Below, in pieces: positions 1 to 488 of a DNA stretch of 64,000 nucleotides (positions are counted from its first letter, which is position 1; the number at the start of each line of letters is the position of its first letter). A program made the translations under genes and the position numbers. Source of the stretch: Euprymna scolopes (lineage: Eukaryota). The notes under the pieces were generated by a model. That model did not search any database. It worked only from the letters and a program-made list of their open reading frames with translations, and had not been told where the DNA came from. The DNA lies in NCBI GenBank assembly GCA_053919585.1, contig CM132804.1; one strand, 5' to 3'.

Positions 1-12
1 TCTCGTGTTGCC

Positions 13-92
13 GAGTTTGAATCGTTCGACTGCTGTTAATCGTGACACCCTGCACTGAAGATTCCCGAAAGGATGAAACACTAGTATCAGTA
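13..92 (+). ncRNA. Minimal type I hammerhead ribozyme preceded by a B-box-like motif (head cut off by window start)
   Basis: CTGAAGA 55-61, stem II tcc/gga, GAAA 75-78, short stem III AC-ACTA-GT (palindrome ACTAGT), GTA triplet; stem I ctgca/t-cag has a 1-nt gap; GAGTTTGAATC at 13-23. Confidence 0.6.
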
Positions 93-120
93 GGTATTTA
101 ATTATTATAGTAAAAAATTA

Positions 121-136
121 TTATATATATGCACAT

Positions 137-206
<70 letters not shown>
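121..206. repeat. Compound microsatellite (TA)n(CA)n(TA)n(GA)n
   Basis: Seen directly. Confidence 0.98.
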
Positions 207-336
207 CGTCATCCACATACAGTACTGTTTCGCAGCTAATCAGTGCAGCTAGACAGTCAATTACCTCAAGCCAGGATTGAAACCCGACCGCCTGTACAAC
301 AGTCAAGGTTCCTAACCATCACGGTAATCGGCGGCT
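207..336 (-). mobile_element. tRNA-derived SINE-like element with a 3' minimal hammerhead (G8->U variant)
   Basis: Minus strand: ...TACCGTGATGGTTAGG (A-box/D-arm)...GGGTTTCAATCC (B-box-like), resembling tRNA-Glu, then ctgca-CTGATTA-gctgc-GAAA-cagtactg-TA|tgtgg. Confidence 0.65.
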
Positions 337-488
337 TCTGTGCGAGTCGCGAATTAACGATGTTTTGACATCGTCCGAAATACCTAAGCTCCATTTGTTT
401 ACACAAAGAACATCGCTTTATACGCTAATGGTAATTCGTTCGTGTATCACTTCTCACTTCTCAATATGCTCAACTCAAGATGAAGAGC

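What the first reader, a model, noticed from the sequence alone, without database searches (positions are those of the whole stretch)
1..340. Two related tRNA-head + hammerhead SINEs inserted tail-to-tail in one microsatellite
Seen: minus strand 336-207 has a tRNA-Glu-like A/B-box head followed by ctgca-CTGATTA..GAAA..GTA. Plus strand 13-92 has a B-box-like motif followed by ctgca-CTGAAGA..GAAA..GTA. In both, the core starts exactly 30 nt after the 12-nt B-box segment, and both have palindromic loop III (ACTAGT, AGTACT). They converge on the same (TA)(CA)(GA) tract. Established: Schistosoma Sm-alpha repeats combine a tRNA-derived Pol III promoter with an HHR; palindromic loop III allows dimeric cleavage. 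Inference: a ~130-nt Pol III SINE family whose end is made by ribozyme cleavage and which is probably mobilised by PLEs rather than LINEs. The U at core position 8 probably inactivates the minus copy.
Basis: partly seen in the sequence, partly recalled or inferred. Interest (0 to 1): 0.8.

Follow-up and report, generated by a model that had tools for sequence, protein, structure and literature searches.

The report
Two dead hammerhead-carrying SINE-like repeats
Two worn-out copies of two different, very abundant short jumping elements of a cephalopod sit tail to tail at one microsatellite. Each pairs a tRNA-gene-like promoter motif with a small self-cutting-RNA (hammerhead) motif, a design already known from blood flukes and animal "retrozymes", so the locus is ordinary.

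Summary

- **Both arms are highly repeated.** Thousands of contigs from two species matched them at 80% or better.
- **They are two families, not one.**
- **Plus arm (1-117).** The family majority restores a canonical dimer-type type I hammerhead: stem I of 6 bp, core CUGAWGA, a 10-nt palindrome as stem III, and a GUC cut site. A near-consensus B box lies just upstream. The window copy has two private substitutions (86, 89) that break stem III and stem I, so it is impaired too.
- **Minus arm.** This is a roughly 283-bp unit (207-489), not 130 nt. Its hammerhead-like module is far beyond chance (expected <0.001 per window). However, U8 and the missing stem II are shared by the other copies that could be laid across that part.
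- **3' ends.** Neither arm ends at the ribozyme cut site.
- **tRNA likeness.** tRNA detectors do not recognise either head. The A/B-box case holds only at family level.
- **Mobilisation.** Association with (TA)n fits Penelope-type insertion, but no Penelope element lies in the window.

Earlier notes of this scan report the same kind of element on other pieces of this genome. Verdict: a new member of a known kind (Sm-alpha SINEs, retrozymes), and an inert locus.

The parts
1..117 (+). 3' part of a copy of repeat family P (tRNA-like T-arm, then hammerhead, then AT/A-rich tail). The window start cuts it.
   Evidence: Depth of laid contigs is high from about 15 to about 117, and contig pieces span 1-116, 10-108 and 22-117.
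13..24 (+). Decayed B-box / T-loop motif (GAGTTTGAATCG).
   Evidence: The loose-end consensus of other copies reads GCCGGGTTCGAATCTCCCGACC here, which is 1 mismatch from the B-box consensus. The window copy has 3 mismatches.
49..94 (+). Type I hammerhead motif of family P. Stem I 5' strand 49-54, core 55-61, stem-loop II 62-74, GAAA 75-78, stem III with palindromic loop 78-87, C17 at 88, stem I 3' strand 89-94. Private substitutions at 86 and 89 impair it.
   Evidence: In the family majority 86 is G and 89 is T (about 98% of depth). Position 59 (N7) is A or T, and 62 (10.1) is T or A. Dimer cofold.
95..117 (+). AT-rich tail of family P beyond the cut site, ending in an A run.
   Evidence: Family similarity continues to about 112-117, and the flanks of other copies are AT-rich with low agreement.
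118..206 (.). Compound microsatellite (TA)4..(CA)12(TA)~24(GA)11 between the two 3' ends.
   Evidence: read laying skipped 121-218 as repeat.
207..489 (-). One unit (about 283 bp) of repeat family M, lying between two microsatellites.
   Evidence: Contig pieces 225-383, 239-420 and 262-409 bridge the supposed head boundary at 336/337. The loose end behind 418 continues like the window. No second copy lies in the window.
213..249 (-). Hammerhead-derived module of family M. Stem I 5 bp (249-245 with 217-213, counting 2.1-1.1 from 244/217), core CUGAUUA (243-237), only GCUGC where stem-loop II should be, GAAA, a perfect 10-nt palindrome ACAGUACUGU (228-219), and A17 at 218.
   Evidence: Chance expectation is <0.001 per window. 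No variant of 10% or more at 225-246 among laid contigs. At 247 a T/C variant turns U.G into C-G in stem I.
265..336 (-). tRNA-like segment of family M, with an A-box-like motif at 326-316 and a B-box-like motif at 284-274.
   Evidence: Box spacing is tRNA-like. Family-majority letters improve the A box to 1 mismatch. tRNA detectors do not recognise it.
337..489 (-). Upstream part of the family M unit, of unknown role, with a small hairpin at 369-384.
   Evidence: High depth at 351-420 and contiguity with 225-350 in many contigs.
490..526 (.). (TA)n tract flanking the far end of the family M unit.

Best explanation
The region holds two independent, decayed insertions of two different, very abundant, non-coding short retroelement families of a cephalopod genome. 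Both families are built from a tRNA-gene-type promoter module (B box / T-arm; in family M an A box too) followed 30 nt later by a type I hammerhead module. Helix III of that module is a 2-bp stem with a 6-nt palindromic loop.

Inferred life cycle of master copies:
1. Transcription, either by Pol III from the boxes or by read-through.
2. Pairing of two hammerheads through the 10-nt palindrome, giving an extended helix III.
3. Cleavage after GUC.
4. Reverse transcription into (TA)n or AT-rich DNA by a Penelope-like element's enzymes.

At this locus nothing is functional. The plus copy has two private substitutions that open helix III and helix I. The minus copy belongs to a lineage whose hammerhead has U at position 8 and no helix II. 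The tail-to-tail layout is best read as two separate hits on one (TA)n target, not as one event.

Shown here: the motifs, the multi-copy status, the family-majority letters, the dimer fold and the (TA)n association. Inferred: Pol III transcription, cleavage in vivo and the Penelope partner.
For: - **Multi-copy.** 18,666 contigs of run X1 were laid on 1-420 at 80% or better, as were contigs of a second species (X5). Depth peaks on the hammerhead of the plus arm.
- **Plus-family majority.** It restores a canonical hammerhead (86 G, 89 T). The only polymorphic core position is the free N7 (59 A/T), and a 62 T>A variant makes 10.1-11.1 an A-U pair.
- **Dimer fold.** The majority form gives -27.6 kcal/mol with a 10-bp intermolecular helix III, against -8.0 for the monomer. 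The window copy gives only -19.2.
- **B box.** The family loose-end consensus upstream of 37 carries a near-perfect B box.
- **Minus module.** It is beyond chance and keeps stem I and the palindrome.
- **Enrichment in the window.** Strict hammerheads also lie at 26600-26649 and 3721-3674, against 0.04 expected.
- **(TA)n association.** 5 of 6 hammerhead-like motifs lie within 131 nt of a (TA)8+ tract, against a random chance of 0.15 each.
- **Literature.** Penelope-like elements prefer (TA)n and carry hammerheads near their 3' ends (PMC8557442, PMC4209133). Sm-alpha is a tRNA-derived SINE with a hammerhead (PMC2770079).
Against: - No Rfam hammerhead or tRNA model matches, even on 61- and 141-base searches. 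This is weak evidence, because Rfam also misses the clean motif at 26600.
- 10.1-11.1 is U.U in most family P copies, not the usual G-C.
- No Penelope element is in the window. The only reverse transcriptases there are LINE-type.
- The plus element ends in a short A run, as LINE-dependent SINEs do.
- In family M the tRNA-like part sits mid-unit, not at the 5' end, so its promoter role is doubtful.
- Family-level letters come from contigs selected for likeness to this copy. High-depth consensus unitigs that differ in the 211-252 part could have been missed, since depth falls steeply there.
- No RNA ends or strand data were available.
Confidence: 0.7

Rival explanations
1. These are ordinary tRNA-derived SINEs copied by a LINE. 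The hammerhead motif is a passenger with no role, and the flanking microsatellites grew out of the elements' own A/T-rich tails rather than being the target.
For: Two LINE-type RT ORFs lie in the window. The plus element ends in GTAAAAAA before the microsatellite. Octopus tRNA-derived SINEs have been known since 1994 (reference cited in PMC10886601). Family M amplified with a non-catalytic core.
Against: Neither arm shows similarity to the regions downstream of the LINE ORFs or to anything else in the window. Hammerhead-like motifs are enriched and tied to (TA)n tracts. The family M unit has (TA)n on its far side too, and its tRNA-like part is not at the 5' end.
Confidence: 0.15
2. Both arms are fragments of tandem 'retrozyme' arrays, that is hammerhead satellites expressed as circular RNAs. 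The tRNA-like motifs are incidental and not promoters, and transcription is by read-through.
For: Single contigs show head-to-tail joints of the plus family. One joint runs 85 to 3 with 26 letters between, a period of about 109 nt. Others run 92 to 37, 98 to 37 and 101 to 8. Published animal retrozymes have no promoter of their own (PMC7761336). tRNA detectors fail on both heads.
Against: At this locus each family is present once, not in tandem. The family-level B box is near-consensus, and in family M the A and B boxes stand at tRNA spacing, with 0.00 expected. The tandem joints are each seen in one contig only.
Confidence: 0.1
3. The minus-strand 'hammerhead' was never a ribozyme. Only the plus arm carries one, and the resemblance of the two arms is convergence on short motifs.
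For: The core is CUGAUUA and only 5 nt stand in place of helix II. This state is shared by the other laid copies. Spacers between B box and stem I are not alignable, and overall pairwise similarity is marginal.
Against: The combination of stem I, CUGA, GAAAC, a perfect 10-nt palindrome and GUA is expected <0.001 times per window. Its layout matches the plus-family hammerhead part for part, with pairing-preserving differences in loop III and stem I.
Confidence: 0.05

Closest known systems
Sm-alpha / Sj-alpha SINE-like elements of Schistosoma (Ferbeyre et al. 1998; Laha et al. 2000; as summarised in PMC2770079)
   Same: A short, non-coding, very high-copy retroposon that combines a tRNA-derived Pol III promoter region with a type I hammerhead whose short helix III favours dimeric action.
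   Different: The phylum differs (cephalopod mollusc). There is no sequence relation. Here 10.1-11.1 is U.U or A-U, one of the two families has a non-catalytic core, the elements sit in (TA)n tracts, and the tRNA origin is not recognisable to tRNA detectors.
Metazoan non-LTR retrozymes (Cervera and de la Pena 2020, PMC7229834; review PMC7761336)
   Same: Low-GC, 170-400-nt non-coding units with type I hammerheads and a weak, palindromic helix III. They are thought to borrow Penelope-like enzymes and are known in a mollusc (mussel).
   Different: Retrozymes are defined as tandem repeats expressed as circular RNA and are said to have no promoter. Here there are single dispersed copies with A/B-box motifs, and circular RNA was not tested.
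Minimal hammerheads of Penelope-like elements (Cervera and de la Pena 2014, PMC4209133; Lunse et al. 2017, as cited in PMC7761336)
   Same: Massively repeated, dimer-type hammerheads with a palindromic 15.2-16.2 and loop 3, associated with retroelement 3' regions and weak as monomers.
   Different: PLE min-HHRs have a long helix II (7-8 bp), a conserved G10.1-C11.1 pair and usually no helix III. Here helix II is 3 bp flanked by U.U, helix III is 2 bp plus a 6-nt loop, and no PLE ORF is nearby.

Membership tests
Hammerhead ribozyme, type I | Conserved core C3 U4 G5 A6 N7 G8 A9 / G12 A13 A14 / A15.1-U16.1 / H17 | tested here: met
   Plus arm: all core letters are present in both the copy and the family majority. 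Minus arm fails this feature: position 8 is U, in this copy and in the laid family members.
Hammerhead ribozyme, type I | Three helices around the core, with I open and II and III capped | tested here: inconclusive
   Plus-family majority: helix I 6 bp, helix II 3 bp with U.U at 10.1-11.1, helix III 2 bp plus a palindromic loop. The window copy breaks one pair in helix III and one in helix I. The minus arm has helices I and III but no helix II.
Hammerhead ribozyme, type I | Recognised by the curated covariance models (Rfam hammerhead families) | tested here: inconclusive
   No match at E up to 10 on 600-, 61- and 141-base searches. The clean motif at 26600-26649 is missed as well, so the models are blind to this minimal form.
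Hammerhead ribozyme, type I | Self-cleavage at H17 | not testable with these tools
   Needs in vitro transcription of monomer and dimer constructs, or end-specific RNA sequencing.
tRNA-derived SINE | 5' head recognisably derived from a tRNA | tested here: not met
   ARAGORN finds nothing in 1-600, or in a majority-corrected version, down to an 80% threshold. Rfam tRNA does not match. In family M the tRNA-like part lies about 150 nt inside the unit.
tRNA-derived SINE | Internal Pol III A and B boxes at tRNA-like spacing | tested here: inconclusive
   Copy level: no better than chance, 14 observed against 8 expected. Family M majority: A box 1 mismatch and B box 2 mismatches, 31 nt apart, with 0.00 expected. 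Family P: B box 1 mismatch in the family, but the A box would lie outside the window.
tRNA-derived SINE | Dispersed, high copy number | tested here: met
   Thousands of distinct contigs in DNA runs of two species.
tRNA-derived SINE | 3' tail shared with a partner LINE | tested here: not met
   No similarity to the two LINE copies or to anything else in the window. LINEs elsewhere in the genome were not tested.
Metazoan non-LTR retrozyme | Head-to-tail tandem repeats of a 170-400-bp unit, each with a type I hammerhead | tested here: not met
   One copy of each family at this locus. Isolated tandem joints of family P appear elsewhere in single contigs.
Metazoan non-LTR retrozyme | Expression as linear and circular RNA | not testable with these tools
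   Only assembled contigs of an RNA run were available. They carry no strand or end information.
Penelope-dependent non-autonomous element | Insertion into (TA)n or other microsatellites | tested here: met
   Both arms abut microsatellites, and family M has (TA)n on its far side too. 5 of 6 hammerhead-like motifs lie within 131 nt of (TA)8+. The target bias is documented in PMC8557442.
Penelope-dependent non-autonomous element | 3' module homologous to that of an autonomous Penelope-like element of the same genome | not tested
   No PLE ORF was seen in the window and no genome-wide search tool was available.
Penelope-dependent non-autonomous element | Inverted 5'-truncated partner copy of the same element | tested here: not met
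   The two convergent arms belong to different families and lie tail to tail, not head to head.

The most novel reading that the evidence does not exclude
Cephalopods carry a superfamily of Pol III-promoted hammerhead SINEs copied by Penelope-like enzymes. In this superfamily the hammerhead-shaped 3' module (stem I plus the palindromic helix III, which lets two RNAs pair) is what the reverse transcriptase needs, not the cleavage. That would explain how family M spread to at least thousands of copies with U8 and no helix II, while keeping stem I and a perfect 10-nt palindrome.
Probability: 0.15. Interest if true: 0.6.

Novelty: new member of a known kind. Interest (0 to 1): 0.33.

Why it matters
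The role of hammerheads in Penelope-like elements and retrozymes is still open (PMC8557442 says so explicitly), and animal retrozymes are said to lack promoters (PMC7761336). Cephalopod families that join a tRNA-type promoter module to a dimer-type hammerhead would be a second, independent Sm-alpha-like case. One of them lost the catalytic core yet stayed abundant. Together they offer a natural comparison of whether cleavage is needed for spread. I found no paper describing such elements in cephalopods in the searchable library. This particular locus is inert and adds only two decayed copies.

Tried and rejected
- **Rfam at gathering and at E up to 10**. No hammerhead or tRNA hit, but a control showed the models also miss a clean local hammerhead, so this negative carries little weight.
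- **ARAGORN at default and relaxed thresholds**. No tRNA, so I dropped the 'tRNA-Glu-like' label.
- **Other copies in the window** by BLAST with 7-nt words. None. The weak hits at 31307, 31556 and 61509 are AT-rich noise.
- **Two metagenome scans for the family P hammerhead**. No hits.
- **Earlier scan notes by sequence or motif words**. Blank.
- **MITE reading of 207-489**, prompted by a weak terminal inverted match (I1). Rejected, because the ends share only about 5-7 letters.
- **A second hammerhead in 337-489, on either strand.** Read by eye; none was convincing.
- **Homology of the two arms beyond the functional modules.** The spacers do not align, and pairwise p is only 0.02-0.06.
- **Skip joints at 288-293 to 383-386**. 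Read as split local alignments across this copy's diverged 309-336 stretch, not as a deletion subfamily. This is unproven.

Full report
**What is there.**

On the plus strand:
- A decayed B-box-like segment lies at 13-24.
- Exactly 30 nt later come stem I (49-54), the core CTGAAGA (55-61), a 13-nt hairpin, GAAAC, the loop ACTAGT and ATC.
- An AT-rich stretch follows, ending in an A run at about 117.

On the minus strand:
- An A-box-like motif lies at 326-316 and a B-box-like motif at 285-274.
- Again exactly 30 nt later comes GCTGCA, then CTGATTA (243-237), only GCTGC, GAAAC, the loop AGTACT and GTA.
- TGTGG (217-213) follows and pairs back to stem I.

The two 3' ends face each other across a compound microsatellite at 118-206. 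A further (TA)n tract lies at 490-526.

**Is it more than chance?**
- The pattern CTGANGA..GAAAC..GTH occurs 4 times in the window against 0.2 expected, and CTGANGA alone 48 times against 21.
- A strict descriptor finds two further clean hammerheads, at 26600-26649 (+) and 3721-3674 (-), against 0.04 expected.
- A deliberately degenerate descriptor hits only the minus copy. It allows any letters at positions 7 and 8 and sets no helix II requirement. It does require GAAAC to open a perfect palindrome, plus a stem I of at least 5 bp. It produced no hit in 1000 shuffled windows.

So both modules are real hammerhead-type sequences.

The promoter boxes are weaker. At copy level the A/B pair is not above chance (14 observed, 8 expected). 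ARAGORN and the Rfam tRNA model see no tRNA.

Rfam also sees no hammerhead. It equally misses the clean motif at 26600, so that negative says little.

**Family level.**
Contigs of two DNA runs of the window's species (X1, X24), one DNA run of a second species (X5) and one RNA run (X2) were laid on 1-420 at 80% likeness or better.
- 18,666 contigs of X1 alone matched, so neither arm is single-copy.
- Contigs of single loci have word depths of about 8-37, while summed depth reaches about 3 million on 43-70. That suggests tens of thousands of copies or more, but the tool warns that depth is not a copy number.
- Practically no contig fits both arms, so these are two families.

**Family P (plus arm).**
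Depth peaks on the hammerhead itself. About 98% of depth reads G at 86 and T at 89.

With those two letters the motif becomes a textbook type I hammerhead:
- stem I of 6 bp (CCUGCA with UGUAGG);
- core CUGAWGA;
- helix II UCC/GGA;
- GAAAC;
- a perfect 10-nt palindrome ACACUAGUGU as helix III;
- a GUC cut site.

The only common core polymorphism is at the free position N7 (59 A/T). A 62 T>A variant is common in the window's species and absent in the second species. It turns the U.U at 10.1-11.1 into A-U, so the family went on diversifying after the two species split.

Cofolding two majority motifs gives -27.6 kcal/mol with a 10-bp intermolecular helix III, against -8.0 for the monomer. The window copy reaches only -19.2.

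Upstream of 37 the other copies read a near-consensus B box / T-arm (GCCGGGTTCGAATCTCCCGACC), preceded by an anticodon-arm-like hairpin. The A-box region would lie beyond base 1 and could not be read.

Family similarity runs on to about 112-117, some 28 nt past the cut site. Genomic 3' ends are therefore not made by the ribozyme.

**Family M (minus arm).**
Long contig pieces span 225-383, 239-420 and 262-409, and depth is high again at 351-420 and beyond. The repeat unit therefore does not start at 336. It fills 207-489, about 283 bp, between two microsatellites, and the tRNA-like part sits mid-unit.

This copy's A-box stretch (309-336) is strongly diverged, giving a depth trough. Majority letters improve the A box to one mismatch at tRNA-like spacing from the B box. 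That combination was not seen in 30 shuffles.

Across 225-246 no variant reaches 10%. CUGAUUA, GCUGC and GAAAC are therefore the state of the copies that could be laid, not a private lesion. At 247 a T/C variant changes a U.G pair of stem I into C-G.

Caveat: depth falls steeply towards 211-238. Abundant subfamilies with a different (perhaps intact) 3' module would not have aligned there.

**Are the arms related?**
They share the design, the 30-nt spacing and a part-for-part similar hammerhead. The loop III differences keep the palindrome, and the stem I difference keeps the pair.

However, the spacers do not align, and overall pairwise similarity is marginal at p 0.02-0.06. Common descent beyond the modules is not shown.

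**Mechanism.**
- Five of six hammerhead-like motifs in the window lie within 131 nt of a (TA)8+ tract, where a random segment does so with probability 0.15.
- Penelope-like elements are documented to prefer (TA)n, to form tandem or inverted insertions and to carry hammerheads near their 3' ends (PMC8557442, PMC4209133).
- Animal retrozymes are thought to be their non-autonomous riders (PMC7229834; bioRxiv 10.64898/2026.07.22.740005).

This makes Penelope-type mobilisation the best guess. It remains inferred: the window holds only LINE-type reverse transcriptases, neither arm resembles their 3' regions, and no strand-specific or end-specific RNA data were available.

The tail-to-tail layout involves two different families. 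It is therefore two hits on one target rather than the inverted-pair scar of a single Penelope event.

**Comparison and verdict.**
The design matches the Sm-alpha/Sj-alpha SINE-like elements of schistosomes (PMC2770079). It overlaps with metazoan retrozymes, which however are tandem and are said to lack promoters (PMC7761336). I found no paper describing it in cephalopods. The giant squid genome paper only counts 235 Rfam hammerhead hits (PMC6962438).

Earlier notes of this scan report the same kind of element on many other pieces of this genome and in this window. I used them as leads only. I checked the two in-window motifs myself.

This is a new member of a known kind. The locus itself carries two dead copies. 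The one point worth following is that family M stayed abundant with a non-catalytic hammerhead remnant.

Noticed in passing
window 26566-26768 (motif 26600-26649, + strand): A clean type I hammerhead between two (TA)n tracts: stem I 7 bp, CUGAUGA, helix II 3 bp flanked by U.U, GUA site. Rfam does not detect it even in a 1.3-kb search.
   Followed up: partly
window 3674-3721 (- strand): A second strict hammerhead (CUGAAGA, helix II GUCC/GGAU, stem I 5 bp) with no tRNA-like motif upstream. Its core and helix II resemble those of family P.
   Followed up: partly
window 25514-25640 (+ strand): A tRNA-like segment followed 16 nt after its B box by a CUGAUGA..GAAAC..GUC motif with a 5-bp helix III. 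ARAGORN calls it tRNA-Met only at an 80% threshold. This is a third family of the same design.
   Followed up: partly
all four hammerhead motifs with a helix II in the window (55, 3721, 25593, 26600): Position 11.1 is U in every one (..U GAAAC), giving U.U or G.U instead of the usual G10.1-C11.1. This may be a lineage-specific trait of these cephalopod hammerheads.
   Followed up: no
window 38413-39870 and 52966-54651 (+ strand): Two related LINE-type reverse transcriptase ORFs (RVT_1, E 6e-37 and 1e-29; YADDT motif; no GIY-YIG domain detected).
   Followed up: partly
window 6832-8556 (+ strand): ORFs with PIF1 helicase, Pif1 2B and UvrD_C_2 domains, possibly a Helitron-type helicase remnant.
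   Followed up: no
contigs of runs X1 and X2 laid on window 3-85: One head-to-tail joint of family P with only 26 letters between position 85 and position 3. This implies a tandem unit of about 109 nt made of anticodon-arm-like hairpin, T-arm and hammerhead, with no room for an A box.
   Followed up: no
window-wide: 27 (TA)8+ tracts in 64 kb (1.7% of the window), and 1,954 N. CTGATGA occurs 20 times against 7 expected, which suggests many more decayed hammerhead remnants.
   Followed up: no
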